A stretch of 64,000 nt of DNA from the IMG/VR virus record IMGVR_UViG_3300025121_000011, positions 186,001 through 250,000 of that record; one strand, 5' to 3'. Below the pieces are notes generated by a model, which had not been told where the DNA came from, searched no databases, and saw only the letters and a list, made by a program, of their open reading frames with translations. A program made the translations under genes and the position numbers. This document shows positions 23,757 through 58,400 of the stretch, piece by piece; positions within the stretch are counted from its first letter, which is position 1; each line of letters begins with the position of its first letter.

Positions 23757-24092
23757 ATGGGAGGAATTCCGATATCCTATTTTCACGATATGGTTACAGA
23801 ACTTAAAATGAGTTTGGAATATACTTATGATGATTCTTGGTATGGTAATGTGGTATACAGAGGGTATTCTTATAGATTTCCAGAAGGAAATGTTACTTTA
23901 GCGGTGGTTCCATATCACTCATATTATTTTATGCCACCAAGTTATATTAACTTTTTTTCTGGTGGTCGATTTTACAGACCAGGTCCTATATCTCCAAGAG
24001 AGGCGGCAGAAATTTTGTTAGATCATAAGATCCCAATTTATAATTATTTGGATTTTTTTAATTCTGATGTTTATGTTGATGGAGATATTTAA
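23757..24092 (+). CDS. Hypothetical protein with C-terminal IYNYLDFF motif
   Basis: GAGG RBS; ISPREAAEILLDHKIPIYNYLDFFN. Confidence 0.55.
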   Translation: MGGIPISYFHDMVTELKMSLEYTYDDSWYGNVVYRGYSYRFPEGNVTLAVVPYHSYYFMPPSYINFFSGGRFYRPGPISPREAAEILLDHKIPIYNYLDFFNSDVYVDGDI

Positions 24093-27762: not shown

Positions 27763-28045
27763 ATATACTTTTGAATGTGATAAATGTGATTTTAATGATA
27801 TTAAGACTTTTAGTATTTCTGATTTTTTGATATATAAAGAAGAGAAAAAAGAATGTCCAGAATGTAATGCTGGCGTATTATCTCATAAGCTGGGGAAAAT
27901 TAGAAATGAAGTTGATAAAAGTTCTTTAGAAATAATGGATGATATAAGAATAGATGTACAGAAGACAATTAAAAAGATAGAAGCTGGAGATCAAAGGACT
28001 ATTGAGTCCATCTATGGCGATAAACCTAACCCATATAAGGAGTGA
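27755..28045 (+). CDS. FmdB-like zinc-ribbon protein
   Basis: MPKYTFECDKCD...CPEC. Confidence 0.7.
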   Translation: MPKYTFECDKCDFNDIKTFSISDFLIYKEEKKECPECNAGVLSHKLGKIRNEVDKSSLEIMDDIRIDVQKTIKKIEAGDQRTIESIYGDKPNPYKE

Positions 28046-29952
28046 ATATGGCGGATACCAACCTAATGGACTTGCTTCAAAGTCATATTGAAAAGAAATC
28101 AGAGTTGTCTTGGACTGGAACCTTAAAAGAGTACGTCCAAATGGTAGTTGAAAATCCCGGATTATATAAAAATGCTCATCAAAGAGTTTTAGAAATGATT
28201 GAGTCTCATGGCATAGAAAAAGATGCAGATGGTAATATAACTGGATATACTTTTTTCAAAGATGATTTATTTGGTATTGACACTCCTATTGAACAGATAA
28301 TGTCTTATTTGCGTGCTGCCGCAGCCGGAAGCGAAGTAGGAAGAAGAATTCTGTTATTATTTGGTCCAACATCTTCTGGAAAATCACAATTAGCAATTTT
28401 ATTAAAGAGAGGACTGGAACAATATTCTAAAACAGATGCTGGAGCAATTTATGAACTAGTAGATTCTCCAATGCACGAAGAACCATTAATAGCAGTTCCA
28501 CAAGAATTAAGACCAATGTTTAAAGAACGTTATGGAATAAATATACAAGGCGAATTAAGTCCATTAACAGCTCTTCTTCTTAAAGAAAAATATAATGGTG
28601 ATTTTCTAAAGATGCCGGTTAGAAGAACGACAATCTCCGAACGAGATAGAACTTGTATAGGAACTTTTGTCCCATCTGATAAGAAAAGTCAAGATATTTC
28701 AGAATTAGTTGGTTCACTAGACTTGAGCACTATAGGAACTTATGGATGCGAATCTGACCCAAGAGCTTATAGATTTGATGGAGAGTTGAATGTTGCGAAT
28801 CGTGGTATCATGGAATTCGTAGAAATGTTAAAGGTAGATCAAAAGTTCTTATATGTTTTGTTGACATTGGCACAAGAGAAAAATATTAAGACTGGAAGAT
28901 TTCCACTGATATATGCAGATGAATTTATTCTATCGCACAGTAATGAGACGGAATACAATAGATTCTTAGCTAAAGATGAAATGGAAGCACTTCACGATAG
29001 AACAATTGTTGTTAGAGTTCCATATAATCTGCAAGTAGAAGAAGAAATTAAAATTTATCAAAAGTTGATAGATCAAGCAGACTTCAAGAAATGTCATATT
29101 GCACCACACACTTTACGCTGTGCGGCTATGTTAGCTGTTTTATCTAGACTAAAGAACTCCAATAATCAGAGTTTATCTCCACTTAAAAAGATGCATCTTT
29201 ATAACGGAGAAGATGTAGAAGGATTTACTGCCGCAGAAGCTAGCAAATTTAAGAGTGAATTTCCATCAGAAGGTATGACCGGACTTTCTCCGCGATATGT
29301 TATCAATCGATTATCTGCGGAATTAGCAAATGGAAAAGAGTTTGTTACTCCTATTGATATTATTAGGTCATTACGTGACGGATTAGAATCCAATCCTAAA
29401 GTTAATGCTCAGGAGACTGCTCGATTAGAAGATCTTTTAACATTGATCATTGAAGAATATAATAAAATGGCAAGAAATGATGTGCAAAAGGCATTCTTTG
29501 TAAACTTTGATTCTGAAATAGGTGCTTTGCTTAAGAATTATTTAGATCAAGTTGAAGCCTTTTTAGATGGAGCAAAATTAGAAGATGCCTGGGGTAAAAA
29601 GGTTCCTCCTGACGAAAGATTAATGCGATCCATCGAAGAGAAGGTTCAGATCTCCGAAAGCGGGAAAACGTCCTTTAGACAAGAAATTTATAGAAAGATG
29701 TTAAAATCTCAAAAAGATCATGGAGAATATCGTTATCAAGATCATCCAAGACTTAAAGAGGCTTTAGAGAAGCAGCTTTTCGAGGAGCGTAAGGACACTA
29801 TTAGACTTACAATAAGTTCTCGCAACCCAGACAAAGAAGAGCTGAAGAGAATTAATGGTGTTATAAGTATTCTATGTGAAAGGCATGGATATATTGTTGA
29901 ATCTGCTAATCAGCTACTTAGGTATGTAGGCTCATTAATGGCTCGCAACTAA
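28042..29952 (+). CDS. prkA: PrkA/YeaG family AAA+ ATPase (annotated serine protein kinase)
   Basis: DLFGID, LLLFGPTSSGKS, SPMHEEPL, QDISELVGS, DPRAYRFDGELNVANRGIMEFVEMLK, EALHDR, GLSPRY, DERLMRSIEE, HGY. Confidence 0.93.
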   Translation: MNMADTNLMDLLQSHIEKKSELSWTGTLKEYVQMVVENPGLYKNAHQRVLEMIESHGIEKDADGNITGYTFFKDDLFGIDTPIEQIMSYLRAAAAGSEVGRRILLLFGPTSSGKSQLAILLKRGLEQYSKTDAGAIYELVDSPMHEEPLIAVPQELRPMFKERYGINIQGELSPLTALLLKEKYNGDFLKMPVRRTTISERDRTCIGTFVPSDKKSQDISELVGSLDLSTIGTYGCESDPRAYRFDGELNVANRGIMEFVEMLKVDQKFLYVLLTLAQEKNIKTGRFPLIYADEFILSHSNETEYNRFLAKDEMEALHDRTIVVRVPYNLQVEEEIKIYQKLIDQADFKKCHIAPHTLRCAAMLAVLSRLKNSNNQSLSPLKKMHLYNGEDVEGFTAAEASKFKSEFPSEGMTGLSPRYVINRLSAELANGKEFVTPIDIIRSLRDGLESNPKVNAQETARLEDLLTLIIEEYNKMARNDVQKAFFVNFDSEIGALLKNYLDQVEAFLDGAKLEDAWGKKVPPDERLMRSIEEKVQISESGKTSFRQEIYRKMLKSQKDHGEYRYQDHPRLKEALEKQLFEERKDTIRLTISSRNPDKEELKRINGVISILCERHGYIVESANQLLRYVGSLMARN

Positions 29953-29963
29953 GGGAGTGGCTT

Positions 29964-31913
29964 TTGGATAAAAAATACAAAGATGCGCTATGGTTGAGTA
30001 AAACCTATTTAGATGATAGACAATCTGCGGAGACTATAGCGCATTTCTGCGGAGTCTCAAGCCAGACTATAAGATATTTTATTAATAAATATAATTTACG
30101 TGATGAAAGAGTTAAAATAGATAACGACTTAAAGGAAAAGTTTTTATTTAAACTTAAAAGTCTCTATATAGATGAGAATCTCTCTGTAAGAGAGATCTCC
30201 TGCTTGTTAGAACAAAATGAAGGCACCATAATGTCTATTTTGGCTAAAAACAATATTCAAAAAAGCTTGAATATTCGTCACGAAAAAGCTAAAGAAGCTA
30301 GGGCAAAAACACTTATTAAAAAGTATGGAGTAAATCACGTTAGTAAGATTCCTGGTATAAAAGAGAAAATTGAAGCTACTAACTTAGCAAGATATGGTCA
30401 TTCTAATGTATTAAAATCCTTGGAAATTAGAGAAAAGATTAAAGCTACAAATCTTGAAAGGTATGGTGTAGAAACCCCACTTGAATTGAAAGAATTTCGT
30501 GACAAGTCTAATAAAACGTGTCTAGAAAAATATGGAGAAATATATCCTCAACGGCTTAGTTGCATAAAAGATAAAACATCCAAAACTAATTTAGAACGAT
30601 ATGGTTTTGATAATCCAATGAAAGTTGAAGAATTTGCAAATAAGCAGAAAGAGTCAGTATTTAAAAATTATGGAGTGGATCATCCGCTTCAAAGTATGGA
30701 GATCTATTCGAAGTTATGTGAATATAATCTTGAAAAGTTTGGAGTGGACAACGTTTTAAAGTTAAAAGAAACAAGAGATAAATCTAATGCAACTAAACTA
30801 TCCAGGTACGGAACAATACATCCGTTACAAAATGAGAATATTCTAAATAAAGTAAAGAATACTAATTTAGAACGTTATGGTACAAAATGGTCGATTCAAA
30901 ATAAAGAGATTCGTTCAAAAGGAAGAGAAGCTTCTATTTCAAATGGATTATTTACAATCTATCATGGGAAAACTGCTCATGAATGGGCGAACGAGTATGA
31001 CATACCAATGGTTGGCTTCTATAAGTGGATTGGCAATAATCCATTGTCATCGAGAGAGCAGATTATCTCGTATCTGGAAGGATTCGAAAGACATAAAACA
31101 GATATAGAGAATATTATAGAAGAGAAATTTGGTTTTGATAAGTTTAATAAAATTTTTGACAAGTCTATGAATTATAGACCAGATTTTAAATTAACTAACT
31201 CAATAGCTCTTAATGTGGATGGCCTGTATTGGCATTCAGAGCTAACTAAAGATAAATCATATCACTTTGAAATGAGGTCTAAGTATGAAGCTGCTGGTCT
31301 TAGAATTTTACAATTCAGAGAAGATGAAATTTATCAGAAGCTAGATATAGTTGAGTCAATGATTAATAACGTGCTGCACAAAAACACATCTAAAATAGGT
31401 GCTAGAAAATGTTCTATACAGCTTGTCAAAAATTCAGAAGCTTCAAAATTCTTAGAAAAAAATCACATAAAGGGAGCAAAACACGCTAAGCATATTGGTT
31501 TGTATTATAATGATGAATTGTTATCGGTAATGTCCTATAAAACAAATTCAAATTTAACATGCAAGATCGAGAGATTTTGCACAAAATTAGGAACTGTGGT
31601 GTCTGGCTCATTCTCTAGACTTCTTGGTTTTTTGATTAAGAATAACGAAATAGCAATTATTCATTACTGGGTTGATCTGCGATATGGAAGTGGAAAGTTT
31701 TTGCAGCAATTTGGATTTGTACATGCCAAGGACACGCTTGGTTGGAACTGGACAGATAAAGTAAATACCTATAATAGACTAAGGTGTAGAGCTAATATGG
31801 ATAAGAGAGGGTTATCTCAAGCAAAACATGCTGAAGAATTAAAATGGTTTAAAATATATGATGCAGGACAACGTTTATATATTTTAAATAATAAAACAAA
31901 TTTAGGAGATTGA
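29964..31913 (+). mobile_element. Hef-like putative homing endonuclease, copy 2
   Basis: TTG start behind AAGGGAG; about 10 TNL(E/A)(R/K)YG-type repeats; YRPDF...NVDGLYWHSE...FREDE; YWVDLRYG...IYDAGQRLY. Confidence 0.75.
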
Positions 31914-33839: not shown

Positions 33840-35036
33840 ATGTCACAACAGTATGATAGCTTATCTGATATTTGGAAGCTTAAGGGTCGTGGGAAACGCG
33901 ATTCTGAGCGACACAAAGAATTGGTTAAACGTGCCATTCGAGAAAATGGAAGGGACCTGATCACAGAATACAATATCATACGTTCTGATGGAAGTAAAAA
34001 AGTAAAAGTCCCAATTCGCTTTTTAGATAAATATCATTTTAAATATGGAAAATTAAAAGATGATAAAGGAGTTGGACAAGGATTAGATGGTAAGCCTGGA
34101 GATAAATATAAAGTTGGAAGCCCAGCACCCGCCGGAGGCTCTGGACAAGCAGGCAATGGAGATGGAGAACGTTATTATGACGCAGAGGTTTCAATTGATG
34201 AAATTGTCGATATTCTGATGCAAGAACTTAATCTTCCTTGGCTTGAACCAAAAGGTACAGCACAGATAGAATCAGAAGAAGAGCAGTTTGACTCTATTGA
34301 AAAGAAAGGCATTATGCCCAACTTAGATATTAAACGATCTTTGATTCAAAATATTATTCGACACGCTGCAAAAGGTGACCCAAAAGTTGGTCAATTTCAT
34401 AAAAATGATCTTCGTTTTAAAGAATGGGAAAATGTAAAAGAGTATCATTCTAATGCAGCCATTTACCTCTTAATGGATCGCTCTGGTTCTATGACTCTCG
34501 AAAAGACTCATATTGCTAAAAGTTTTTTCTTTTGGATGGTTCAATTTTTAAAGAAGCGATATAAAAAAATAGATATCATTTTTATAGCGCACGACACTAA
34601 GGCTTGGATTGAAACAGAGGAAAACTTCTTTGCTATAAATTCCGGAGGCGGCACTCAATGCAGTTCAGCATTTGCGTTGGCGCACGACCATATAATCACA
34701 CACCATCCTGCGGACCGATGGAATAATTATGTTATTGAATTCAGCGATGGAGATAACTGGGGTAACGATAATCTATTGTGTCTAGATTATGTTAAGAAAC
34801 TATTGCCATTATGCCGGGCCATCGGTTATGGAGAAATTATTCCAGATTCAGATAAGGAAAATGCTTGGTTTAATAAATCTAATTTATTATCTACTGTATT
34901 AGAAAAAAATATTAAACGAACAAGATATGTAACATTAAGATTGCAAAAACGAGATGATGTTTTTGATGCACTAAAGAAATTCTTTAATATTGATGGAGCA
35001 TCAGATAAAAATCTAAGAGATGAGAATGGAAAATGA
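33840..35036 (+). CDS. yhbH: YeaH/YhbH (DUF444) vWA-domain protein
   Basis: DSERHKELV, Gly-rich GQGLDGKPGD linker, ELNLPWLEPK, LMDRSGSM MIDAS, KSFFFWMVQFL, GGGTQCSSA, FSDGDNW. Confidence 0.92.
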   Translation: MSQQYDSLSDIWKLKGRGKRDSERHKELVKRAIRENGRDLITEYNIIRSDGSKKVKVPIRFLDKYHFKYGKLKDDKGVGQGLDGKPGDKYKVGSPAPAGGSGQAGNGDGERYYDAEVSIDEIVDILMQELNLPWLEPKGTAQIESEEEQFDSIEKKGIMPNLDIKRSLIQNIIRHAAKGDPKVGQFHKNDLRFKEWENVKEYHSNAAIYLLMDRSGSMTLEKTHIAKSFFFWMVQFLKKRYKKIDIIFIAHDTKAWIETEENFFAINSGGGTQCSSAFALAHDHIITHHPADRWNNYVIEFSDGDNWGNDNLLCLDYVKKLLPLCRAIGYGEIIPDSDKENAWFNKSNLLSTVLEKNIKRTRYVTLRLQKRDDVFDALKKFFNIDGASDKNLRDENGK

Positions 35037-36630
35037 AAAACCAAAATATCAAGATGAAATTTGGCTTAAAACTGAGATTTTAATATCTAAAAAAACTGCT
35101 ACAAAAATAGCAAAAGAAAACGGATGGTCTGCTTCTACGGTTTTAAAATGGCAAAGGCATTTTGGAATTATAGAAGAATATAAGAATCACAAATGGCTCC
35201 AACATCAGTTTTTAGATCTTAATAAAACAGCTTTAGAGATTTCAAGAGAACAACATTGTTCTTCAATCACAATAAATAAATACCTCTGTAAGTTTAATAT
35301 TAAAAAATCTTATGACGCAGCAATACAGGCTAAGATTCTTTCAACAAAAAGAACTTGTATCGATAGATATCAAGTAGATAATCCTATGAAGTTGGCAAAT
35401 ATCAAACAAAGAGTAAAGATAACTTCTAAAGATAAATATGGTGAAGAACATTTTTTAAAAACAAATACAGGCAGAGAGAAACTAAAAGAATCTATTAAAC
35501 AAAAATATGGTTGTGATTATATAACTCAAACACCAGAAGTAAAATTAAAAATCAAAGAAACAGTAATGAATAAGTACGGTGTTTGTAATGTTTCTATGGT
35601 GCCTGAGATCGCAAAAAAGAAAAGACAGACGCTTATCTGTTTGCATGGATTTAATCCGGCAACAGAACAGACGGGACTCTGTAGAGTTATTAATGGTCTT
35701 ACAACCAAAGAATTAGCTGAGAAGCATAATGTACCATATTCTTCTTTGAATTATATTTTTAGAACATTTCATATAGAAACTGAAGAATCTTTAGAAGCAT
35801 TCTTATCAGATTACAAGATTGGACCTAATAATTTAGAAAAGTATTTAGAAGATTTAATAGATCTTCCACATTGGAATATTGCGCCTGAAAATGTTAAATT
35901 ATCATATAGACCAGATTTTAGATTAAGTAATTCTATTTATTTAAATGTTGATGGGTTATATTGGCACTCTGATAAATTTAAAGATAAAAATTATCATTAT
36001 AAAATGAGAGAAGAGTTTGAATCCGCAGGCTTGCAAATCGTACAATTTAGGGCAGACGAGATACATGCAAAGCCAAAAATCATTAAATCTATTATAAATA
36101 ATAAGGCAGGAAAGTCGCAAAAGATCTCCGCTAGAAAAACCATCATTAAAAAAGTGTCTCATGAAAATGCTATGATTTTTCTAAATGAGAGTCACATAAA
36201 AGGATATAAAGCTGCAAAACATATTGGATTATATTTTGAAAATATTTTGGTCATGATTTGTTCTTATAAGATTATAAATAAAATTTTGAAAATTGAAAGA
36301 CTTGCAACATTACTTGATCATTTAGTTGTTGGAGGAGCATCTAAATTGTTTAAATTCCTTGAACGTAATTTAAAATTTGATATGATTCATTATTGGGTTG
36401 ATTTACGATACGGAAAAGGAGATTTTTTAAGTTCTATGGGGTTCTCTAAGAACAAAGATGTTCTTGGATGGGAGTGGACTGACTATGTTAAAACATATAA
36501 TCGTTTACAATGTAGAGCCAATATGGATGATAGAGGTTTATCACAATCAGAACACGCTTGTGAGTTGGGATGGGTCAAAATTTACGATGCAGGACAAAGA
36601 TTATGGATCAAACAAAACAATCTTCGATGA
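35026..36630 (+). mobile_element. Hef-like putative homing endonuclease, copy 3
   Basis: Tandem N-terminal HTH, xxKYG repeats, YRPDF...NVDGLYWHS...FRADE, YWVDLRYG...IYDAGQRLW; start overlaps the yeaH stop. Confidence 0.75.
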
Positions 36631-37044: not shown

Positions 37045-39699
37045 ATGAATGATGTTCTGGAAAGAAGAATTAAAATGTTAGAAGAGTTAGCAACTAAAGA
37101 ATTAGGATTAGACTTCTTTCCAATTATGTGGGAAATAGTTCCTGAAGAGGTAATGTTAGAAGTGATGTGCTATGGACTACCTTCAAGAATTAGGCATTGG
37201 TCTTATGGGCAAAGTTATGAGTATCAAAAGACGCAGGGAGAAATGGGAGCATCTAAAGTTTATGAATTGGTTTTAAATAATGATCCCGCATTCGCCTTTT
37301 TGTTAGATTCTAACAGTAATATTGCAAATTCAATGGTCGCGGCACATGTTTTGGGTCATGTGCATTTCTTTAAGAATAATTATTTATTTAAACAAACCGA
37401 CCGTAAAATGGTTTATCATGCTGCTGAGCGAGCATCAAGAGTAGAGGAGTATATTACTCAATTCGGATTAGAAGAAGTAGAAAAAACCATGAATATTGCT
37501 TTAGCTATGGATAAGAATATTAATTGGAAAAGAGGAATAAATAGAACACAATATGGTGATAGGAAAAGTGTCTGGCAAAAGAGAAAGGTACAAGAGTTTG
37601 ATGATATGTTTGGACTAAATAAAAAACCCGAATTAGAGCGAGTCATTGAAAATGATATATTTCCACCAAGTCCAGAGGAGGATTTGCTGTGGTTCTTCGC
37701 TAATTATGCGCGTTTAGAGCCCTGGCAAAAAGATATTTTTGAAATTATTAGAGAAGAGTCATTTTACTTCTATCCGCAATATAATACACAAATAATAAAC
37801 GAAGGTTTTGCCTGTGTTTCCGGAGATACGCTTGTTCCAACTGAACAAGGTATTCTACAGATTAAGGATATAGTTTTAGGTGATGCATTATATGTTGATG
37901 ATAATGAAAAGAGGAGGCAGATTGTTGGAAAAAAGATAATTGGAGAGAAAGAGTGCAAAAAGATTATAACTAAACGAGGCTATGAGTTATGTGGTGCAAA
38001 TAATCATCGTGTATTATGTGATAATAAGTGGAGGCAGCTAGATGAGTTAGAAGTAGGGCAAAGAATAGATATATCTTTAAATAACGAGATTTGGTCAAAT
38101 AATTACGTACAAGTTGATTATAAACCCAAAAGAGCGAAGAAAACTTTACTAGATATATCAAGACTCGCAGGAGTTGCTCCAGTCACTATTGCTAGAAGGA
38201 GGATGGGTTTAAATGTTAAAAATCTAAATCATATAGATTCTTTAATTAAGATTTATGAGGCTGAACAAAATGATTTAACTTTATGCAGCTCATATAGCTT
38301 TGATAGGCGAAAAATATTTTTAATTCCAGATCATATTGATGAGAAATTTGGAAGGTTTTTGGGCTTATTGATTGGTGATGGACATATATCCAGAGCAAGC
38401 AGATCTTTTGGATTTACATCTGGTGATTTAGAATTAGCTGAAGAATTTAGGACCTTAATTTGTGATTTATTTGCAACAAAGTCTGTGCTCAAGAAGGATG
38501 AAAATCGATATAGAATCATCTGTCATTCAGAGGGAATATCTGATTTTTTAATAAATTATATAGGATGCAAGCAAGGAGTTTCTGCGAGAAAAAAAGATGT
38601 GCCATCGATAATTTTACAATCTCCAAAGTCCGTTATGTCATCGTTTATTAGTGGATTATTCGATGCAGATGGATGTGCTCATAAAAATGGAATTACATTC
38701 GTAACTGCTAGTAAGCAGATGGCGAAATTAATTCAAACTATTTTAGTTAATTATAATATTCTTTCTAGTAAATATTACAGACAAGATGAGACATATGCTA
38801 TTAATATATTTGGATTATCAGCAAAGAAATTTTCTGAACAAATTGGATTCGGATTAAACAGAAAACAAAATATTTTAAATGCTTTTATACAGAATAAAAA
38901 ATGGTTTAAGAAAGAAAAATCATATGATGAGATTAAACATATAGAATCGCTTACTGAAATAGTTTATGATATTTCTGTTGAAGAGTCTAATAGATATGTG
39001 GCAAATGGATTAATTAATCACAACTCATTTTTTCACGCAGAATTAATGTATTTGCTTTCGGAAAAAGAACTTAGTTCAACTGAATATTTAGAATTTGTTA
39101 AGATTCATGAGCGCGTTATTCAACCAGGAAATAATAAGTTAAATATCAATCCATATTTTTTGGGATTTACGATTTTAAATGATATTAGAGCAAAATGGGA
39201 TAAGAAGCATAAAGATGGAGAATCGGAACTTACCGGAATACAAAAAATTCTAAAAGTAGTAGAATTAGAGGATGATATTTCATTTTTAAGAAATTATCTG
39301 ACACAGGAAATTGTTGATAAACTTAAAATGTTCGTCTATATTGAAGAATTTGATCACGCAAAAAATAAATTTATCGAAATTAAAAGTACCCGAGTAGAGG
39401 ACGTAGTAGAATATATAGCGAAGGATATTTACAACTATAGGGCCCCAATTATTTCTATTAATGCAGCCACTCCAACTGGAATTGAATTAGTACATCAAAG
39501 TAGAGAAGTTGGAACACTAGACCCAAAGCATTTAGAAAAGGTAATGGGATACATATATGAAATATGGCCAGGAATTGTAGATTTGGAAACGATAGATAAT
39601 CATGGTGAAATAATTAATTTTACTTTTGATGAATTTGGAATGAGTTTCCAAGACGATGAAAAAACGGGAAAACATCGTATAACTTTTAAAAAGAAATAA
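37045..39699 (+). CDS. spoVR: SpoVR/YcgB family protein, intein-containing
   Basis: GLPSRIRHWSYG, YELVLN, AHVLGHVHFFKNN, EDLLWF, IIREESFYFYPQ, INEGFA|SFFH, NPYFLG, DISFLRNYLT. Confidence 0.92.
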   Translation: MNDVLERRIKMLEELATKELGLDFFPIMWEIVPEEVMLEVMCYGLPSRIRHWSYGQSYEYQKTQGEMGASKVYELVLNNDPAFAFLLDSNSNIANSMVAAHVLGHVHFFKNNYLFKQTDRKMVYHAAERASRVEEYITQFGLEEVEKTMNIALAMDKNINWKRGINRTQYGDRKSVWQKRKVQEFDDMFGLNKKPELERVIENDIFPPSPEEDLLWFFANYARLEPWQKDIFEIIREESFYFYPQYNTQIINEGFACVSGDTLVPTEQGILQIKDIVLGDALYVDDNEKRRQIVGKKIIGEKECKKIITKRGYELCGANNHRVLCDNKWRQLDELEVGQRIDISLNNEIWSNNYVQVDYKPKRAKKTLLDISRLAGVAPVTIARRRMGLNVKNLNHIDSLIKIYEAEQNDLTLCSSYSFDRRKIFLIPDHIDEKFGRFLGLLIGDGHISRASRSFGFTSGDLELAEEFRTLICDLFATKSVLKKDENRYRIICHSEGISDFLINYIGCKQGVSARKKDVPSIILQSPKSVMSSFISGLFDADGCAHKNGITFVTASKQMAKLIQTILVNYNILSSKYYRQDETYAINIFGLSAKKFSEQIGFGLNRKQNILNAFIQNKKWFKKEKSYDEIKHIESLTEIVYDISVEESNRYVANGLINHNSFFHAELMYLLSEKELSSTEYLEFVKIHERVIQPGNNKLNINPYFLGFTILNDIRAKWDKKHKDGESELTGIQKILKVVELEDDISFLRNYLTQEIVDKLKMFVYIEEFDHAKNKFIEIKSTRVEDVVEYIAKDIYNYRAPIISINAATPTGIELVHQSREVGTLDPKHLEKVMGYIYEIWPGIVDLETIDNHGEIINFTFDEFGMSFQDDEKTGKHRITFKKK
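37813..39024 (+). mobile_element. Intein (404 aa) with LAGLIDADG endonuclease in spoVR
   Basis: Begins CVSGDT, ends VYDISVEESNRYVANGLINHN followed by Ser; FLGLLIGDG and FISGLFDADG motifs. Confidence 0.92.
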
Positions 39700-39709
39700 G
39701 GGAGTTGCG

Positions 39710-40264
39710 ATGAATACTGAAGTTACAGAAGGACAAGTATCTGTTAAAAAAGAGCCGTACATCGATTATTCTTTTCAATTTAATTTAGCAAGAGAAAGAA
39801 CGGAAAAGAAAATTTTTAGTTATATGTGCGATCTTGCTAAGAAGTTATTAGAAACCAAAAGAAAATTAGGGCTCTTAGTTGTTTTAGGGACATTCGATAG
39901 GTATTCGGATTATTCTGTTCCTGGTATGCGTCAATTGGGAAAGAATACTATTCAGAAGTATATAAATGTTGCTTTTGGTCAATTCGAAACAGATATAGAG
40001 AAAATATTCGAATCAAAAGAAGACGGAGCTATTATTATAAATCATAATGGTCAGATTTTGGGCACCGGAATTTATCTTACAGTAGATCACCCCTCTTTGG
40101 AGATACCAGAGGGCGCCGGAACAAGACATATTTCTGCTGCTTCTTTTTCTACTAGAGATGATGTAATATCTACATTTACTCTCTCAGAAGAGACCCTGAC
40201 TGTTCGATTATGGAAAGATGGAGCCTTTACGGAACAATATGGGCCAGAAGAAGATGCAGTCTGA
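39710..40264 (+). CDS. Stand-alone diadenylate cyclase (DisA_N/DAC domain)
   Basis: EDGAIII (DGA), GAGTRHISAA (RHR-like), TLSEE; no DisA linker/HhH domain and no transmembrane segment. Confidence 0.8.
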   Translation: MNTEVTEGQVSVKKEPYIDYSFQFNLARERTEKKIFSYMCDLAKKLLETKRKLGLLVVLGTFDRYSDYSVPGMRQLGKNTIQKYINVAFGQFETDIEKIFESKEDGAIIINHNGQILGTGIYLTVDHPSLEIPEGAGTRHISAASFSTRDDVISTFTLSEETLTVRLWKDGAFTEQYGPEEDAV

Positions 40265-40800
40265 TGTCCTTGCTTAGTAATGAAGAAATTCATAAGATTT
40301 TCTTAGATAATCAAGACTCTTTTAATAATCATTGGAGGCAAGATTTATTTATAAATCTCTGTCCTTTGGTTATTAGTAGAATAAAAAAATTTAAAACTTT
40401 TTCTTATGTTCAAGATCTAGAGCAAGAGTTCAAATTAGCTTTATGGTCTGCAATTAAAAGTTTTGACCACCATAAACATTTTGACTTTTACCGTTGGGTG
40501 AATTGGTACTTTGCCAATTCCAGTAGAAATTTTCAAAAAAATTATAATAAGATTAACTCTATTAATCTTGATGGTAATGATATAAAAATGCCAGATGATT
40601 TATTATTCGCAGAAGAGATGTTGAATTGTCAACAGCTTTCGTTAAGAGAAAAGTATATCATCCAAAAAATATTTTTTGAAGACCAATCATTAGAAGTAAT
40701 TAGTAAAGAATTAAATCTCTCAATAGAGAGAGTATGGATACTTAAAAATAAAGCAATTAAAAAAATGAAAAATATGGAGTATGATTATAATGAATGTTAA
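40264..40800 (+). CDS. RNA polymerase sigma factor (sigma70 family, regions 2 and 4 only)
   Basis: DLEQEFKLALWSAIKSFD...FYRW; LSLREKYII...SLEVISKELNLSIERV..LKNKAIKKMK; ATG 40264 overlaps the DAC stop (TGATG). Confidence 0.8.
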   Translation: MSLLSNEEIHKIFLDNQDSFNNHWRQDLFINLCPLVISRIKKFKTFSYVQDLEQEFKLALWSAIKSFDHHKHFDFYRWVNWYFANSSRNFQKNYNKINSINLDGNDIKMPDDLLFAEEMLNCQQLSLREKYIIQKIFFEDQSLEVISKELNLSIERVWILKNKAIKKMKNMEYDYNEC

Positions 40801-43546
40801 TGGAAGTATTCTGAGTGATATTATTATGCATAATAAATATGCTAGATGGAATGAGAATTTACTCAGAAGAGAGACTTACTCAGAATGTGTTGATAGAAAT
40901 AAACTGATGCATTTAGAAAAATTTCCAGAGCTTAAAGATGAAATAGAGGCGGCGTATACCTTTGTGTATGATAAAGTTGTGTTGCCATCTATGAGAAGCA
41001 TGCAATTTGCTGGTAAGCCTATTAAGATAGCCCCAAATCGTATGTTTAATTGTTTTGCGAAAGAGACAAAATTTGTTACATCTAAAGGGACTAAATCTTT
41101 TGAAGAATTTTCTGATGGTGATCATGTAGAAGTTGTAACGCATACAGGTACATTTAAACAAGCAGTTGTTAGATCTTATGGAGAACAAGAACTGTTTGAA
41201 ACAATTTTAATCAGAGGTCGTAATTCTCAAACGGTATATGCTACAAAAGATCATAGATGGATTAAATATGATGGAGAGCAAACAACTAGATTACAAAAAA
41301 AGGATGTTTTATATCCAACTCCAAAGCTTGAGTTATTTAATTATGCTACTTCAGAACCATTAGAAAAGTTATATTGGTGTTATGGCTATGCCTATGGGAA
41401 TGGCACCATTATAGAAAATGAAACTTCTCAACATTATATTGTTAATTTGCATAGTGTAAATTCTAAGAAATACGCCTCTCGATTTCAAGAAATGGGATTT
41501 GAAACAAGTAATCTTAAGTCACATAATGATTTTTTAGCTTGCATTGGAAATTATCATAAGCTTATATCAAATATAGATGCCAATTCTAAAGACTTAATAA
41601 AAGCATTTTTTACCGGATATTTAAATTCATCTGGAATTAGAAATACAGATTTTAATAACAATGATTCTGTGTCTAAATATAAACAAATTTCAACCACTGA
41701 TTTGGAGCATGCGCAGTTTATAGAAAAGTGTGCAGAAATTTCTGGATATTTTATATTATCTAAGAAAAAAATCATTAAGAATAAAATTATAACTTATCGT
41801 TATACTTTAACAAATAATATTGGAAGCAGTATATCGACAGCTTATTCTGTAAAAAATATTAAAAAAACTGATAGAAAAGAAGAAGTATGGTGTTTAGAGG
41901 TTGAAGAAGATCATAGTTTTATATTGTCTGGTGGAATAGTTACTGGAAATTGCGTTTTTGCTCCAGTTGATGATTATCGTATTTTTGGTGAGGTTATGTT
42001 TTTGCTTCTTGGAGGAAGTGGAGTCGGTTATAGTGTTCAAAATCATCATATAGATAATCTTCCTGAAATTAGAAAGCCTATTAAAACCAGAAGATATTTA
42101 GTAGGTGACTCCATTGAGGGGTGGGCTGAGTCGGTTAAACTTCTCATTAAATCATATTTTCTTAATAGCTCTAAACCTGATTTTGATTTTTCTGATATTA
42201 GATCAAAGGGTGCAAGGTTGATTACATCAGGTGGTAAGGCTCCAGGTCCAGCTCCATTGCAAAAGTGTTTATTTTTAATTGAGCAATTATTAAATTCCAA
42301 AACAGATGGCGATAAGCTTAAGCCAATAGATGCTCATGATATAATGTGTTATATAGCTGACGCTGTGCTCGCCGGAGGGATTAGGCGATCTGCAATGATT
42401 GCGTTATTCTCTATCGATGATATAGAAATGTTAACTTGTAAATCCGGAAATTGGTTTGAAAAGCATCCTCATCGTGGAAGAGCAAACAACTCTGCTGTAG
42501 TTTTACGTTCTAGAGTTACAAAAGAATCTTTTGGAAAACTATTTGAATTCATGAAAGAAAACAAAACTGGAGAGCCTGCTATATTTTTAACAAATGATAA
42601 AGACATGGGTCTTAATCCATGTGGAGAGGCTTCGCTTAGAGCATTTTCTGGTTGTAATTTAACAGAGATAAATGCTTCTTTAATTAACTCTCAAGAGGAA
42701 TTAAATGCTGCGGCAAAAGCGGCTTCATTTATAGGAACTCTTCAAGCTTCTTATACGAGATTTCATTATTTACGTCCAATTTGGGAACGAGGATTTAAAA
42801 AAGATTCTTTAATTGGAGTAGGTATTACTGGTTTAGCAAATGAAAATTTCTTAAAATTAGATTTAACTAATGCTGCTAAAATTGTAGTAAATGAAAATAA
42901 AAAGATATCAGAAACAATAGGAATTAAACAAGCTGCTCGAACAACTTTAGTTAAGCCTAGTGGGACGACAGCTCTTTTACTTGGAACAAGTTCTGGTATA
43001 CATGATTGGTATGCAAAATATTATATACGTCGTATTAAGTTATTAAAAAATGAAGAGATATATCATTATCTTGCTAGAGAATTACCGGAACTAATGGAAG
43101 ATGATTGGGAGAAGCCACACATACAAGCCATATTATCTATTCCTATGAAAGCACCAGAAGGCGCCATTTTAAGAGAAGATACAACACCAATCGCTCTTTT
43201 GGAAAGAGTTAAAGATGTTTATAAGCGTTGGATATTTCCTGGACATATTACTGGTAGCAATACTCATGCAATTAGCTGCACCGTTAATGTTAAAGATAAT
43301 GAATGGGATGAAGTAGAAAATTGGATGTGGACTAATAAAGATAGTTATAACTGCATTTCTGTTTTTCCACATTTTGGTGGTTCATATAAACAACTTCCAT
43401 TTGAAGAAATTACTGAAGAATGCTACTACAAAATGAGTACTAATATACACAGGATTGATTTAACAAAGATATTGGAAATGGCAGACGATACAAATCTTAC
43501 CGGAGAAGCAGCATGTGCTGGTGGTGCATGTGAACTAACATTTTAA
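40781..43546 (+). CDS. nrdJ: Class II (adenosylcobalamin-dependent) ribonucleotide reductase, intein-containing
   Basis: PSMRSMQFAG, RMFN|C, LLGGSGVGYSV, DSIEGWA, SGGKAPGP, AGGIRRSA, NPCGE, VKPSGT, C-terminal ACAGGAC. Confidence 0.9.
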   Translation: MIIMNVNGSILSDIIMHNKYARWNENLLRRETYSECVDRNKLMHLEKFPELKDEIEAAYTFVYDKVVLPSMRSMQFAGKPIKIAPNRMFNCFAKETKFVTSKGTKSFEEFSDGDHVEVVTHTGTFKQAVVRSYGEQELFETILIRGRNSQTVYATKDHRWIKYDGEQTTRLQKKDVLYPTPKLELFNYATSEPLEKLYWCYGYAYGNGTIIENETSQHYIVNLHSVNSKKYASRFQEMGFETSNLKSHNDFLACIGNYHKLISNIDANSKDLIKAFFTGYLNSSGIRNTDFNNNDSVSKYKQISTTDLEHAQFIEKCAEISGYFILSKKKIIKNKIITYRYTLTNNIGSSISTAYSVKNIKKTDRKEEVWCLEVEEDHSFILSGGIVTGNCVFAPVDDYRIFGEVMFLLLGGSGVGYSVQNHHIDNLPEIRKPIKTRRYLVGDSIEGWAESVKLLIKSYFLNSSKPDFDFSDIRSKGARLITSGGKAPGPAPLQKCLFLIEQLLNSKTDGDKLKPIDAHDIMCYIADAVLAGGIRRSAMIALFSIDDIEMLTCKSGNWFEKHPHRGRANNSAVVLRSRVTKESFGKLFEFMKENKTGEPAIFLTNDKDMGLNPCGEASLRAFSGCNLTEINASLINSQEELNAAAKAASFIGTLQASYTRFHYLRPIWERGFKKDSLIGVGITGLANENFLKLDLTNAAKIVVNENKKISETIGIKQAARTTLVKPSGTTALLLGTSSGIHDWYAKYYIRRIKLLKNEEIYHYLARELPELMEDDWEKPHIQAILSIPMKAPEGAILREDTTPIALLERVKDVYKRWIFPGHITGSNTHAISCTVNVKDNEWDEVENWMWTNKDSYNCISVFPHFGGSYKQLPFEEITEECYYKMSTNIHRIDLTKILEMADDTNLTGEAACAGGACELTF
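41051..41950 (+). mobile_element. Intein (300 aa) in nrdJ with an apparently degenerate endonuclease
   Basis: Begins CFAKET, ends VWCLEVEEDHSFILSGGIVTGN followed by Cys; LAGLIDADG-position blocks read YGYAYGNG and FTGYLNSSG (acidic residues absent). Confidence 0.88.
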
Positions 43547-55450: not shown

Positions 55451-58400
55451 ATGAAATTAGTAATTGTAGAGTCTCCCAACAAATGTTCCAAGATAAAAAA
55501 AATCTTGGGAAGTAATTATCTTGTCATGGCCTCTGTTGGTCATATCATGGATTTATCAAAAGAAAAGAAAGATAAAACTTCAAGATTTTGGAACGGAATA
55601 GATTTGAGTACTTGGGATGTGAATTATAGTGTTAGTCCTGGAAAAAAAGATGTAGTAAGTAATTTAAAAGACGCTGCAAAAAAATGTGAAGAAATCTATA
55701 TCGCAACAGATGATGATCGCGAAGGAGAAGCTATAGCTTTTAATATATTAGATATTCTTCCTAAAAAAGGTATCAAAATACATCGAGTTATATTTAAGAC
55801 TATTACACAAAAGGATATTTTAGATGGTATTAAAAATCCTATTCCATTTAATGATAATCTATATGCAGCTCAACAAGCTAGACGAATCACAGATAGATTG
55901 GTAGGATTTAAAGTTAGTCCAATCATGTGGACAAAAGGTTTAAGAAAAACAAGCGCAGGAAGGGTGCAATCTGCCGCTCTTAAGTTTATTGTAGATAGAG
56001 AACGAGAGATTAGAGGTTTTAAACCAGAAGAATATTGGACTATTAAAGCCAAAACTGATTTAAAATTTGATGCTAGTTTTTATGGAATAGATTCTAAGAA
56101 ATATATTCCAAAAACAAAAAAGAAAGTAGATGAAATTTTAAAAGATTTATCAAAAGATATAACTGTTGCTTCTTATGTAACAAAACAAAGAGAGAGATCT
56201 CCAGAGCCGCCTTTTATTACAGCATCTATGCAAAAAGATGCTGGTAATAAATTTGGATGGACTGGTAAAAAAGTTATGGATATAGCACAGAATTTATTTT
56301 CAAGTGGGTTGATTACGTATCACCGTTGTTTCCCTGGGTATGTAAGAATATCTACATCTAAAGGTCTAATTCCTATTAGAGATATTAAGATAGGTGAAGG
56401 AGTTCATACTATCAATGGAATTAAAAACGTAACCGATATAGTTAAAAATAAGAATCGAGATATATTTAAACTAAACACCAAACACGGATATCAAATTTTC
56501 GGATCTAATAATGAACCATTTATGATTTATGATTGTGAGAATAGAGTGCCGGTTTGGAAAAGATTAGATAAATTGAGAGCCGGTGATCTAATAGCTCTTA
56601 GTGGGCAAGAAGGCTTTTCTGAGGTTAAAAATAATATCTTTGAATACACTTGTCCATTTGAATCAGAAATGGATTCAAATAACCTATTAACATGTAATAT
56701 TTGCAATAAAAAATTCAAGTCTTTGTCACCACATATCAAAAGATATCATAAGTTAACGGGCAAAGAATATGTTAAAAAATTCGGAAAAACAAACTTACAC
56801 ACAAACTCTGTAGAAAAATTTAATATTCCTAAAATAATGACTCCGGATTTGGCAAAAATATTAGGATATATATTATCCGAAGGGTGTATATCTAAGAACG
56901 GAAGAAATATTTTATTTTATAATAATTCCAGAGAGGTTTTGAATGATTTTGCGGTCTCTTTTAATAAAATATTTGGTACACAATACAGTCCAATGTATAA
57001 TTCTAATAAATTCGAAGTTAACTCAAAAAGAATAGTTTGCTTTTTGAGTTATTTGGGAATGAATAGTAAACTTTCAATAGAAAAAGAGATTCCACATATA
57101 ATATTTAAATCTGATTTAGAATCTAAAACTGCCTTTATTAAAGCATTTTGGGAAGGAGACGGAAGTTATGATTCAATCATTACTAATTCCGAAAAACTTA
57201 AAAATGATCTAAAATTATTACTTCTTTCTATCGGAATACCTACTGGATGCCATATTAATAGGGAGTACACTGGTTTTTCGATTGGAAATTCATCATATAA
57301 GGTTCAGCTTTCTGGATTTTATATTCAAAAGTTTTTTAATTTAATCGGAGAGCCGATTTCTAAGCACAGAATGGAGCAAAAAGAGAAATTACTAGAAAGA
57401 ACACCAAATGGACAGCATTGGTCAAATAATAAGTTAACAACCGATAATGTTATTTGGGATAAAGTTATTGATAGCTCCTATTCACATAAAGAGGATACCT
57501 GGGATCTTACTGTTGAAGAGCAGCATCATTATATTGCAGAAGGATTTATTGCTCACAATACTGATAGTATTCGGTCAGATCCAGCAAAAATAATTGATAT
57601 TAGAGATAGAATTGAAAAATTACATGGAAAACAATATTTATCTCCACAAACCAGAAAATATGCTTCAGGCGGAAATTCTCAAGATGCGCATGAAAGTATT
57701 AGACCTACTTTTGATACGGTTTCTGTATCATTAGGAACAGATGAACGAAAATTATTAGAATTAATTACTAATAGATTTATGTCCTCGCAAATGGCAGATG
57801 CCATATTTGACCAGGCTGCTGTTAGATTGGAAACAACGGGAAAAGATCACACATACGAGTTTCGCGCCAATGGATCAGTCCAAAGATTTGATGGTTTTTT
57901 AAAGGTATATGGAGCAGCATCAAAAGACAACGTTCTACCAGCATTAAAGAATGGACAAAAGATTGGGGTTGATAAGTATGAATCAAGTCAGCATCACACA
58001 GAAGCCCCCGCCAGATATACGGATCCCGGAACATTTACAGATAAGATGGAAAAGGAGGGTATCGGACGACCAGCTACTTATGCTTCTACAATGGATACTT
58101 TAATTGATCGCAACTATGTTGAGAGAGAAAAACAGAAAATTAAAGCTACAGAAGTAGGTATCATGGTTTCTGATTATTTAACGCATTTCTTTAAAAATGT
58201 TACTAGTTCTGCCTTTACAGCTACAATGGAAACAGAGCTTGATGAAATCGCTGAAGGCAAAAGACAATTTAAAACATCTATGGATACATTTTTTAATCAA
58301 TTAACATTAGAAGTAGACGCAGCCAAAACATCTAAAGTTCAAATATTTAAAACAGATATAGATTGTAGTAGTTGCAATGATGGAACTAAAATGATTAAAA

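What the first reader, a model, noticed from the sequence alone, without database searches (positions are those of the whole stretch)
39710..40264. Minimal stand-alone diadenylate cyclase in a phage
Seen: a 184-aa protein with DGA and RHxS motifs and no transmembrane, DisA HhH or other regulatory domain. Known: DAC domains make c-di-AMP, which controls K+/osmolyte homeostasis and sporulation, and cyclic dinucleotides are also anti-phage signals. Inference: an unregulated viral c-di-AMP source that rewires host physiology or jams nucleotide-based immunity. The product could differ from c-di-AMP.
Basis: partly seen in the sequence, partly recalled or inferred. Interest (0 to 1): 0.7.

Follow-up and report, generated by a model that had tools for sequence, protein, structure and literature searches.

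The report
Jumbo-phage minimal diadenylate cyclase gene
A 335-kb tailed phage encodes a small, single-domain enzyme with every hallmark of a c-di-AMP synthase. The gene always sits directly behind a phage-borne PrkA–YhbH–SpoVR stress-signalling gene set, which suggests the virus makes a bacterial second messenger itself to reprogram its host.

Summary
Window 39710-40264 (+) is a 184-aa ORF with a Pfam DAC domain (E 2.8e-13). A confident AlphaFold model has only CdaA, CdaM and DisA among its 50 best PDB matches. DGA, the adenine-stacking Tyr, T-R-H and S-E-E are all conserved. There is no TM helix and no second domain. The genome is a complete 335-kb tailed-phage record.

In every relative with upstream DNA, the gene lies immediately after SpoVR, in a block PrkA–DUF444(YhbH/YeaH)–SpoVR–DAC, usually followed by a small sigma-70 factor whose start overlaps the DAC stop. 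The linkage persists in a 42%-identical homologue.

The protein belongs to a distinct clade of short DACs. That clade is separated from DacZ-like cyclases by a well-supported branch. It is found mostly on large uncultivated phage contigs and is absent from PHROGs and from 50,697 deposited phage genomes. The "RHI" in place of RHR is shared with DacZ-like relatives and is not a defect.

The most likely function is a c-di-AMP synthase that is active once expressed and is controlled by expression timing. It probably works with the phage PrkA module. A counter-defence role or a non-c-di-AMP product (as shown for bacterial PanS) remains possible. Host and expression are unknown. I class it as a new variant of a known kind.

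The parts
28042..29952 (+). PrkA/YeaG-type AAA+ protein ('serine protein kinase'), first gene of the module
   Evidence: Pfam AAA_PrkA E 1.7e-115 and PrkA E 2.9e-65; NCBIfam PrkA family, 280 bits; syntenic in relatives
29964..31913 (+). DUF7487 ORF inserted between PrkA and DUF444. It is not part of the module, and in relatives PrkA and DUF444 are adjacent.
   Evidence: Pfam DUF7487 E 2.7e-41; absent at this position in L002, L005 and L011
33840..35036 (+). DUF444 (YhbH/YeaH) protein, second gene of the module
   Evidence: Pfam DUF444 E 7.3e-86; NCBIfam spore_yhbH 357 bits, below cut-off
35020..36630 (+). Second DUF7487 + HTH ORF inserted between DUF444 and SpoVR
   Evidence: Pfam DUF7487 E 1.3e-14 and HTH_23; absent in L002, L005 and L011
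37045..39699 (+). SpoVR/YcgB protein interrupted by an intein with a LAGLIDADG endonuclease (intein roughly nt 37834-39039), third gene of the module
   Evidence: Pfam SpoVR E 1.6e-95 in two stretches, Intein_splicing and LAGLIDADG_3; intein-free 450-480-aa orthologues lie directly upstream of the DAC in relatives
39700..39704 (+). Shine-Dalgarno-like GGGAG, 5 nt before the DAC start. The SpoVR stop codon is at 39697-39699.
   Evidence: Read from the sequence
39710..40264 (+). Minimal diadenylate cyclase (184 aa). Key residues: DGA 40022-40030, Tyr122 40073-40075, T-R-H-I-S 40121-40135, S-E-E 40184-40192.
40264..40800 (+). Small sigma-70-family factor (regions 2 and 4). Its ATG shares one base with the DAC stop codon (TGATG).
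   Evidence: Pfam Sigma70_r4 E 2.7e-08 and r2 E 4.8e-04; PHROG sigma factor; NCBIfam sigma70-ECF superfamily; the same 1-nt overlap occurs in L002 and L003
40781..43546 (+). Ribonucleotide reductase large chain with an inserted segment (called an intein by analogy with L039/L041; not scanned here). It overlaps the end of the sigma gene. Given as context for the gene string, not shown to be functionally linked.
   Evidence: ORF; homologues carry Ribonuc_red_lgC/RNR-II_ins_dom in L002 and L005; N- and C-terminal parts match separately in relatives

Best explanation
The gene encodes a catalytically competent, single-domain diadenylate cyclase of a previously unclassified short-DAC clade that lives mainly on large uncultivated phages. 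It is co-transcribed with, and translationally coupled into, a phage-borne PrkA-YhbH/YeaH-SpoVR/YcgB signalling module and a phage sigma factor.

Once made in the infected cell, two or more copies pair head-to-head, as all DACs must, and condense two ATP into 3'3'-c-di-AMP. The protein lacks the TM, HhH, DACZ_N or CdaS-type control elements. Its activity is therefore probably set by when and how much it is expressed, not by a sensor domain.

The nucleotide then acts either on host c-di-AMP receptors or on the co-encoded PrkA pathway, holding host physiology in a state that suits a long jumbo-phage infection.

Shown: gene, fold, conserved active-site residues, phage origin, conserved synteny, separate clade. 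Inferred: activity, product, oligomerisation, co-transcription, target.
For: Fold and residues.
- Pfam DAC E 2.8e-13.
- AlphaFold2 pLDDT 88.8.
- The 50 best PDB matches are all CdaA, CdaM or DisA.
- phmmer alignment to CdaA puts D105-G106-A107, Y122, G137-T138-R139-H140 and S159-E160-E161-T162 on the CdaA DGA, stacking Tyr, GTRH and SEET positions. The roles of these residues are described in PMC6368335 and 10.1101/2022.03.11.483894.
- G106, A107, R139, H140 and S159 are invariant, and D105 and E160 are conserved in at least 90% of 32 sequences down to 27% identity.
- 'RHI' is also the motif of DacZ-like proteins that carry DACZ_N.
- D-to-R spacing is 34 in all 120 close members. It is about 32 in CdaA by the alignment and 37 in cUA-making PanS.

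Context.
- SpoVR is immediately upstream in all 21 close-family loci with upstream DNA, and two small ORFs away in the 42%-identical L039 homologue.
- The 1-nt stop/start overlap with sigma is conserved.
- There is no + strand terminator-like site between SpoVR, the DAC and sigma.
- YeaG, YeaH and YcgB act as one signalling pathway in six bacteria (10.1101/072470).
- Minimal DACs are constitutively active in vitro and in vivo (PanS).

Clade.
- The tree splits 41 short DACs from 75 DacZ-like or EIIA-fused ones with 99% SH-aLRT support. The SpoVR-linked clade has 95%.
Against: No enzymology and no expression data exist: no RNA run holds the sequence. The host is unknown, so it is not known whether c-di-AMP receptors exist in it.

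No known c-di-AMP receptor was found in the phage genome. The RCK_C, CBS and DarA domains were each sought by a single Pfam model across the whole genome, and the ydaO riboswitch by Rfam at gathering thresholds, also across the whole genome.

A predicted SpoVR-DAC complex gave no answer, so a physical link to the module is unsupported. Other subclades of the short-DAC family sit in phage contigs without PrkA, so the module is not obligatory for function. The third residue of the classical RHR motif is Ile, and its effect on chemistry was not tested.
Confidence: 0.55

Rival explanations
1. Counter-defence signal mimic. The phage makes c-di-AMP (or cUA) to keep negatively regulated guard effectors of the Panoptoo/Panoptes type switched off while its own sponges or nucleases remove host immune nucleotides. 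Alternatively, it swamps or desensitises cyclic-dinucleotide receptors of CBASS-like systems.
For: Minimal DACs (PanS, about 150 aa) constitutively make 3'3'-cUA or c-di-AMP that represses the PanE effector, and loss of the signal triggers defence. A TIR-SAVED effector can sense DacZ-made c-di-AMP (10.1101/2025.06.19.660554). The phage and its relatives also encode a DHH phosphoesterase, which is a class proposed as counter-nucleotide defence in jumbo phages (PMC7824862).
Against: Nothing in the neighbourhood is defence- or anti-defence-like. The invariant partner is SpoVR/PrkA, which this model does not predict. There was no PADLOC match. The motifs DGA/GTRH differ from PanS DGF/GGR, and the lid is 3 residues shorter. 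Making c-di-AMP could as easily trigger TIR-SAVED-type sensors.
Confidence: 0.15
2. The enzyme is active but its main product is not 3'3'-c-di-AMP. It could be a mixed cyclic dinucleotide such as 3'3'-cUA, or linear pApA or ADP-derived products. It would then signal to a phage-specific receptor, possibly within the PrkA-YhbH-SpoVR set.
For: PanS shows the DAC fold can make cUA. The clade is as far from characterised DACs as PanS is: 16-25% identity to PDB cyclases in the top 50 matches and best PDB phmmer E only 1.5e-4. No known c-di-AMP receptor is encoded by the phage. An N-terminal motif (D19, S21 and Q23 invariant in the close family) has no counterpart in the N-terminal regions described for characterised DAC classes; this comparison is from the literature and was not tested here.
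Against: The adenine-stacking Tyr of CdaA/DacM is invariant in the close family (Y122). The lid spacing equals that of DacZ-like relatives and is not the extended PanS lid. The nearest characterised class by profile is DacZ, and DacZ makes c-di-AMP (PMC6741144).
Confidence: 0.15
3. It is a catalytically dead or merely nucleotide-binding DAC-fold protein that serves as a regulatory subunit of the PrkA/SpoVR module.
For: The classical RHR is RHI. No activity data exist. The adjacency to SpoVR is tight.
Against: Every residue known to contact ribose, phosphate, metal or adenine is conserved under strong constraint across the family. RH followed by a non-Arg residue is the norm in DacZ-like DACs. 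The SpoVR-DAC complex prediction gave no support, which is not evidence either way.
Confidence: 0.05
4. It is a cellular gene on a mis-binned or chimeric contig, not a genuine phage gene.
For: The ESM Atlas taxa for the nearest cluster are 48% 'Archaea'. Two distant short-DAC members lie in cellular-looking contexts: L008 with MutS/MutL and L042 with aconitase.
Against: The same gene order was found in 17 IMG/VR loci and in TARA, NCBI and Logan contigs up to 405 kb. These carry DnaB, PhoH, endolysin, inteins and homing endonucleases, almost all on one strand. The own genome has terminal repeats, a terminase and a tail-fibre-like gene. A GTDB species-representative scan found only distant Methanomicrobiales DacZ-like hits.
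Confidence: 0.03

Closest known systems
PanS, the minimal DAC of the Panoptoo anti-phage system (preprint 10.64898/2026.08.10.743927)
   Same: It is a single-domain DAC protein of 150-190 aa with no sensor domain. It is expected to be active whenever present, and it belongs to the phage-host conflict arena.
   Different: PanS is bacterial, paired with an S2TM-beta effector, usually beside CBASS, has DGF/GGR motifs and an extended lid, and mostly makes 3'3'-cUA. The phage protein is viral, paired with SpoVR/PrkA and a sigma factor, has DGA/GTRHI and a canonical-length lid, and keeps the stacking Tyr.
DacZ / CdaZ (archaeal diadenylate cyclase; NCBIfam NF041371, Pfam DACZ_N + DAC)
   Same: It is the best profile match among the named DAC classes (E 1.9e-10 for this protein, down to 1.7e-15 for relatives). 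It shares the G-x-R-H-I-S/A-A-A motif and the 34-residue D-to-R spacing. DacZ is a proven Mn-dependent c-di-AMP synthase (PMC6741144).
   Different: The phage protein lacks the roughly 125-aa DACZ_N domain and scores 40 bits against a 430-bit cut-off. A 99%-supported branch separates it from DacZ-like sequences.
CdaA/DacA catalytic domain
   Same: It is the best solved-structure match (Foldseek E 3e-7, target-normalised TM 0.66; phmmer E 1.5e-4). DGA, Tyr, GTRH and SEET all align.
   Different: The phage protein has no three-helix membrane anchor and no CdaR/GlmM partners, and it has RHI instead of RHR. TIGR00159 gave no hit at E <= 1 for this protein; relatives score 18-28 bits against a cut-off of 188.8.
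CdaS (sporulation-specific DAC of Bacillus)
   Same: It is small (about 200 aa), soluble, has an N-terminal helical extension, and is genomically or functionally associated with 'sporulation' genes.
   Different: The NF038328 match is only E 0.011 (15 bits against a cut-off of 225). The model shows one N-terminal helix that is part of the DAC fold, not the two autoinhibitory helices. The PDB CdaS 2fb5 match is E 0.51.
PrkA-YhbH-SpoVR (YeaG-YeaH-YcgB) operons, including those on phages RsoM2USA and Thermus phiYS40-like phages
   Same: The same three-gene signalling set is carried by a large phage.
   Different: None of the deposited phages that carry PrkA has a detectable homologue of this DAC by tblastn. 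A DAC as fourth gene has not been described for cellular or viral versions in the literature searched.

Membership tests
DAC / DisA_N superfamily (Pfam PF02457) | Profile match above the curated cut-off | tested here: met
   50 bits against a cut-off of 27, E 2.8e-13, profile positions 9-118 of 119
DAC / DisA_N superfamily (Pfam PF02457) | DisA_N alpha/beta fold | tested here: met
   AlphaFold2 pLDDT 88.8. All 50 best Foldseek PDB matches are CdaA, CdaM or DisA, with probability 1.00.
DAC / DisA_N superfamily (Pfam PF02457) | Catalytic motifs: DGA, and R-H of the RHR motif with the preceding Thr, plus S-E-E | tested here: met
   D105-G106-A107, T138-R139-H140 and S159-E160-E161 align to CdaA and are invariant or conserved in at least 90% of family sequences. 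The third RHR residue is Ile, as in DacZ-like relatives.
DAC / DisA_N superfamily (Pfam PF02457) | Synthesis of c-di-AMP from two ATP by a head-to-head dimer | not testable with these tools
   Needs enzymology and LC-MS. No homo-oligomer prediction was run.
CdaA/DacA | N-terminal transmembrane helices and a TIGR00159-level match | tested here: not met
   No hydrophobic segment (max KD19 0.97). TIGR00159 was not listed at E <= 1 for this protein.
DisA | C-terminal helical linker and HhH DNA-binding domain; about 360 aa | tested here: not met
   The protein is 184 aa with only a DAC domain. The NF010009 match is E 0.0056, 16 bits against a cut-off of 201.
CdaS | Two N-terminal autoinhibitory helices and an NF038328-level match | tested here: not met
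   15 bits against a cut-off of 225. The model has a single helix at residues 21-48.
CdaM | A single N-terminal TM helix | tested here: not met
   No TM segment. NF038327 scores 26 bits against a cut-off of 225.
DacZ/CdaZ | N-terminal DACZ_N (or pyruvate-kinase-like) domain fused to DAC | tested here: not met
   No DACZ_N hit. NF041371 scores 40 bits against a cut-off of 430. It falls in a separate clade.
PanS (Panoptoo) | A two-gene operon with an S2TM-beta effector, usually beside CBASS | tested here: not met
   The neighbours are SpoVR and a sigma factor in every locus examined.
PanS (Panoptoo) | DGF/GGR catalytic motifs and an extended lid loop | tested here: not met
   The motifs here are DGA and GTRH. 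D-to-R spacing is 34, against 37 in RePanS by the preprint's numbering. No PanS sequence was available for direct alignment.
PrkA-YhbH-SpoVR signalling operon | Co-linear PrkA, DUF444 and SpoVR genes | tested here: met
   Pfam matches for all three, with the same order in relatives. A DAC is not a described component of this operon.

The most novel reading that the evidence does not exclude
The cyclic dinucleotide made by this enzyme is an integral signal of the PrkA-YhbH/YeaH-SpoVR/YcgB pathway, which is conserved across bacteria and whose biochemical logic is still unknown. Jumbo phages would then carry a self-contained 'messenger + pathway + sigma factor' cassette that imposes a starvation- or dormancy-like programme on the host. 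A variant reading is that the phage supplies a decoy nucleotide that silences guard-type immunity such as Panoptoo.
Probability: 0.15. Interest if true: 0.85.

Novelty: new variant of a known kind. Interest (0 to 1): 0.6.

Why it matters
c-di-AMP is regarded as a cellular homeostasis signal. In virus-host conflict, second-messenger chemistry is so far described mainly as host synthesis and viral destruction or sequestration. A virus that synthesises the messenger itself would reverse that picture.

The invariant linkage to PrkA-YhbH-SpoVR also gives a concrete, testable handle on that widespread but mechanistically obscure pathway. Do any of its proteins bind or respond to c-di-AMP?

The family is absent from cultured phages. 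It therefore also marks a lineage-specific trait of widespread uncultivated jumbo phages, with relatives in TARA ocean assemblies. Its small size makes it an easy enzyme to express and assay.

Tried and rejected
- **SpoVR-DAC complex prediction** (L002 SpoVR 450 aa plus DAC 192 aa, with my own alignments). The verdict was 'no answer', score 0.00. It is not evidence either way.
- **Deposited phage genomes.** Megablast of the locus and tblastn of four short-DAC subclades against 50,697 deposited phage genomes found no match. There was no PHROG family for the DAC.
- **PADLOC defence models.** No match for five family members.
- **Phage-encoded c-di-AMP receptors.** No TrkA_C, CdAMP_rec or CBS domain was found. 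No ydaO or other riboswitch was found by Rfam anywhere in the 335-kb genome.
- **Expression.** No RNA run holds the sequence, and the holders are DNA runs labelled groundwater or soil metagenome.
- **Promoter and terminator scan.** Counts did not clearly exceed the shuffled controls, so it was uninformative.
- **Host identification.**
  - The ends of the relative that IMG/VR labels 'provirus' hold only phage-like genes.
  - The sigma factor is generic, not SigF/G-specific.
  - The T4 Gp23 model found nothing, but it also rang in no control genome.
- **First alignment (A1).** It was too diverse for the search for related loci, so I repeated the scan with A2.
- **CdaS-like reading.** I considered and rejected it (two N-terminal regulatory helices, sporulation link); see the membership test.
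- **RHI as a sign of inactivity.** I considered and rejected it, because DacZ-like relatives share the motif.
Full report
**1. The observation**

Window 39710-40264 (+) is an uninterrupted 184-aa ORF. GGGAG lies five bases before its ATG, and the ORF starts 11 bases after the stop of the preceding gene. DGA is at residues 105-107 and R-H-I-S at 139-142.

Pfam finds one domain, DAC (PF02457). The match is E 2.8e-13, 50 bits against a cut-off of 27, and covers nearly the whole profile. No 19-residue window is hydrophobic enough for a membrane helix: the maximum Kyte-Doolittle mean is 0.97.

An AlphaFold2 model built on a 32-sequence family alignment is confident (pLDDT 88.8, pTM 0.82). It shows about 20 unstructured N-terminal residues, a long helix at residues 21-48, and a compact alpha/beta domain. 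Its 50 best Foldseek matches in the PDB are all diadenylate cyclases: CdaA/DacA, CdaM/DacM and DisA. Each has probability 1.00 and target-normalised TM up to 0.67, over about 160 aligned columns. The helix is therefore part of the DAC fold and not an extra domain.

**2. It is a phage**

The window is bases 186001-250000 of a 335,169-bp IMG/VR virus record with direct terminal repeats and 100% estimated completeness. Almost all genes lie on one strand, and GC content is 28-40% along the window (34% genome-wide).

The window holds DnaB, a UvsW-like helicase, PhoH, a LysM endolysin, topoisomerase I, homing endonucleases and a tail-fibre-like protein. Elsewhere the genome has a large terminase split by a LAGLIDADG element, a one-piece tmRNA and about a dozen tRNAs. 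The sigma-70 factor, the tmRNA and the peptidoglycan-binding endolysin point to a bacterial host. Its identity could not be established.

Runs that hold the sequence are DNA libraries labelled groundwater or soil metagenome. Relatives come from TARA ocean and other assemblies.

**3. Active-site anatomy**

The phmmer alignment to solved CdaA chains places the phage residues as follows:
- D105-G106-A107 on the CdaA DGA motif.
- Y122 on the Tyr of the 'YLPL' loop.
- G137-T138-R139-H140 on GTRH.
- S159-E160-E161-T162 on SEET.

Published structures assign these positions to ribose contacts (D, G and the first Arg), the phosphate contact (Thr) and adenine stacking (Tyr). Mutating them abolishes or nearly abolishes activity (PMC6368335; 10.1101/2022.03.11.483894).

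Across 32 family members, down to 27% identity, G106, A107, R139, H140 and S159 are invariant. D105 and E160 are conserved in at least 90%. In the close family, Y122, E161 and I141 are invariant as well.

The one departure from the textbook motif is Ile in place of the second Arg of RHR. This is not a lesion. The nearest relatives outside the family carry a DACZ_N domain or match the DacZ model at 130-258 bits, and they read G-x-R-H-I/A/V/M/T-A-A-A. DacZ-type enzymes are proven c-di-AMP synthases (PMC6741144). I did not verify the residue in the two biochemically tested DacZ proteins themselves.

**4. The family**

The large sequence search found 207 clusters (90% identity) at E <= 0.001. The 119 other clusters listed are 160-215 aa, mostly 175-200 aa. 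All of these that cover the motif keep DGA...RHI, and D-to-R spacing is 34 in all 120 close members. They lie on contigs of up to 420 kb.

The exhaustive profile-free search of 1.8 billion representatives found only 33 clusters (50% identity) at E <= 1e-10. A maximum-likelihood tree of 116 DAC domains separates 41 short DACs from 75 DacZ-like, EIIA-fused or PAS-fused DACs, with 99% SH-aLRT support on long branches. The clade that contains the window protein has 95% support.

By NCBIfam profiles the family is nearest to DacZ, at 40 bits against a 430-bit cut-off. It is much further from CdaM, DisA and CdaS, and CdaA was not listed for this protein. It meets none of the class definitions; see the membership test.

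Family members are mostly viral:
- An IMG/VR scan returned 17 loci on contigs of 21-395 kb.
- Three other subclades (P0128, P0131, P0136) sit in phage-like contigs.
- A pattern scan of GTDB species representatives found only distant Methanomicrobiales DacZ-like genes.
- Two distant members lie in cellular-looking contexts.
- No PHROG family and none of 50,697 deposited phage genomes contains a detectable homologue of four subclades.

**5. The context is the main new finding**

In the window the gene order is:
- PrkA (28042-29952).
- DUF7487 ORFs and small ORFs.
- DUF444/YhbH (33840-35036).
- A second DUF7487 ORF.
- SpoVR with an intein (37045-39699).
- The DAC.
- A small sigma-70 factor (40264-40800).
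- A ribonucleotide reductase with an inserted segment, probably an intein.
- PhoH, then the endolysin.

In relatives without the insertions, the block is a tight string PrkA-DUF444-SpoVR-DAC. SpoVR ends within about 10-170 bases of the DAC start in all 21 close-family loci that include upstream DNA. The same order, with two small ORFs in between, recurs around a homologue that is only 42% identical. In that locus both PrkA and SpoVR carry inteins (L039).

The sigma gene follows in at least 12 of the 21 loci. In the window, and in L002 and L003, its ATG shares one base with the DAC stop codon (TGATG), which suggests translational coupling. No terminator-like site lies between SpoVR, the DAC and sigma on the coding strand, although the scan was barely above background.

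Large-scale mutant fitness data showed that YeaG(PrkA), YeaH(DUF444) and YcgB(SpoVR) act together in one conserved signalling pathway of unknown mechanism (10.1101/072470). PrkA/SpoVR genes have been noted on other large phages, such as RsoM2USA and Thermus phages. Those phages lack this DAC.

**6. How it most likely works**

Shown: a conserved, structurally intact DAC with no sensor domain, encoded inside a phage operon-like string. Inferred:
- (a) It is active when expressed, as isolated CdaA catalytic domains and the minimal PanS are.
- (b) It forms head-to-head pairs, as the chemistry requires.
- (c) Its product is 3'3'-c-di-AMP. The adenine-stacking Tyr is kept. The lid has the length seen in DacZ-like relatives and close to that of CdaA, not the extended PanS lid that permits uracil.
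- (d) Control is by timing of expression, with the PrkA module and the phage sigma factor.
- (e) The target is either host c-di-AMP receptors or the co-encoded pathway.

The phage genome has no recognisable RCK_C, CBS or DarA receptor and no c-di-AMP riboswitch. A phage-encoded target would therefore have to be of a new kind.

I put about 0.8 on 'active cyclic-dinucleotide synthase', about 0.6 on 'the product is c-di-AMP', and about 0.4 on 'acts with the PrkA module to reprogram host physiology'.

**7. Rivals**

An anti-defence role is attractive in the light of Panoptoo. There, a bacterial minimal DAC constitutively makes 3'3'-cUA or c-di-AMP to hold a membrane effector in check. It is also attractive because a TIR-SAVED effector responds to DacZ-made c-di-AMP. 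A phage-made mimic could keep such guards silent. However, nothing in the locus is defence-like, PADLOC finds nothing, and the model does not explain the invariant SpoVR linkage.

A non-c-di-AMP product cannot be excluded without chemistry. An inactive binding protein is unlikely given the conservation. A mis-binned cellular gene is excluded by the repeated viral synteny.

**8. Comparison with the known, and novelty**

The enzyme superfamily is well known, and minimal single-domain DACs were described in 2026 as bacterial defence components. The apparently new points are:
- The viral location.
- The separate clade.
- The fixed association with PrkA-YhbH-SpoVR and a sigma factor.

Full-text searches for phage-encoded diadenylate cyclases found no description of such a gene. 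Neither did targeted reading of the jumbo-phage comparative papers and reviews. The library does not hold every journal, so earlier mention cannot be excluded. I class it as a new variant of a known kind, with interest about 0.6.

**9. Limits**

There is no enzymology, no transcript evidence and no host. The complex prediction for SpoVR-DAC gave no answer. No PanS sequence was available for direct comparison.

Noticed in passing
window 3723-5867, 37045-39699, 40781-43546, 55451-58951; G000:C1 about 87.4-90 kb: The genome is unusually rich in inteins and LAGLIDADG elements. GDP-mannose 4,6-dehydratase, SpoVR, topoisomerase I and the large terminase carry LAGLIDADG and/or intein-splicing matches. 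The ribonucleotide reductase also has an inserted segment, inferred from the split match. Relatives carry inteins in SpoVR (828-871-aa versions in L015, L020, L022, L026) and in PrkA (L039).
   Followed up: partly
window 29964-31913 and 35020-36630: Two DUF7487 ORFs, the second with an HTH, split the PrkA-DUF444-SpoVR string in this phage. They are absent at these positions in L002, L005 and L011, so they look like mobile insertions.
   Followed up: partly
G000:C1:31805-32635 (+) (L034:1459-2289), outside the window: A 276-aa DHH/DHHA1-type phosphoesterase (phrog_4771 E 4.7e-69; Pfam DHH below cut-off) lies directly after a 346-aa ORF that looks adenylosuccinate-synthase-like by eye only. It is conserved in 4 of 4 sizeable relatives (39-52% identity). 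A DHH gene also lies 6 kb from the DAC in L041. It may degrade c-di-AMP or pApA, but this family also occurs in phages without a DAC.
   Followed up: partly
G000:C1:13455-13819 (+): The phage encodes a one-piece tmRNA (Rfam RF00023, 97 bits). ARAGORN reads its tag as ending in ...LKLAA.
   Followed up: no
window 23838-23927 (+): ARAGORN calls a 90-nt tRNA-Ile(TAT) inside ORF 23757-24092. Rfam's tRNA model does not reach its gathering score there, so the call is doubtful.
   Followed up: no
L011 / G001 (IMGVR_UViG_3300009703_004110, 332,270 bp): IMG/VR labels this 73%-identical relative a 'provirus'. Both 12-kb ends hold only phage-like genes (RNA ligase, HNH, LAGLIDADG, an Fe/Mn SOD-like ORF) and no host flank.
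   Followed up: yes
P0124 (313 aa), in the SpoVR-linked clade of the tree: One family member has the DAC in its C-terminal third (residues 208-309) behind about 200 extra residues. It is either a fusion or a gene-calling artefact.
   Followed up: no
L008 (NCBI GCA_054040335.1, 599-kb contig), gene at 7001-7528: A 175-aa short DAC (33-35% identical) sits in a cellular context with MutS, MutL, a P-type ATPase and a KH/beta-CASP nuclease of archaeal aCPSF1 type. The short-DAC clade is therefore not exclusively viral.
   Followed up: partly
window 14812-18429 and 9563-11599: Two large ORFs (1205 aa and 678 aa) have no Pfam or PHROG match at all.
   Followed up: no
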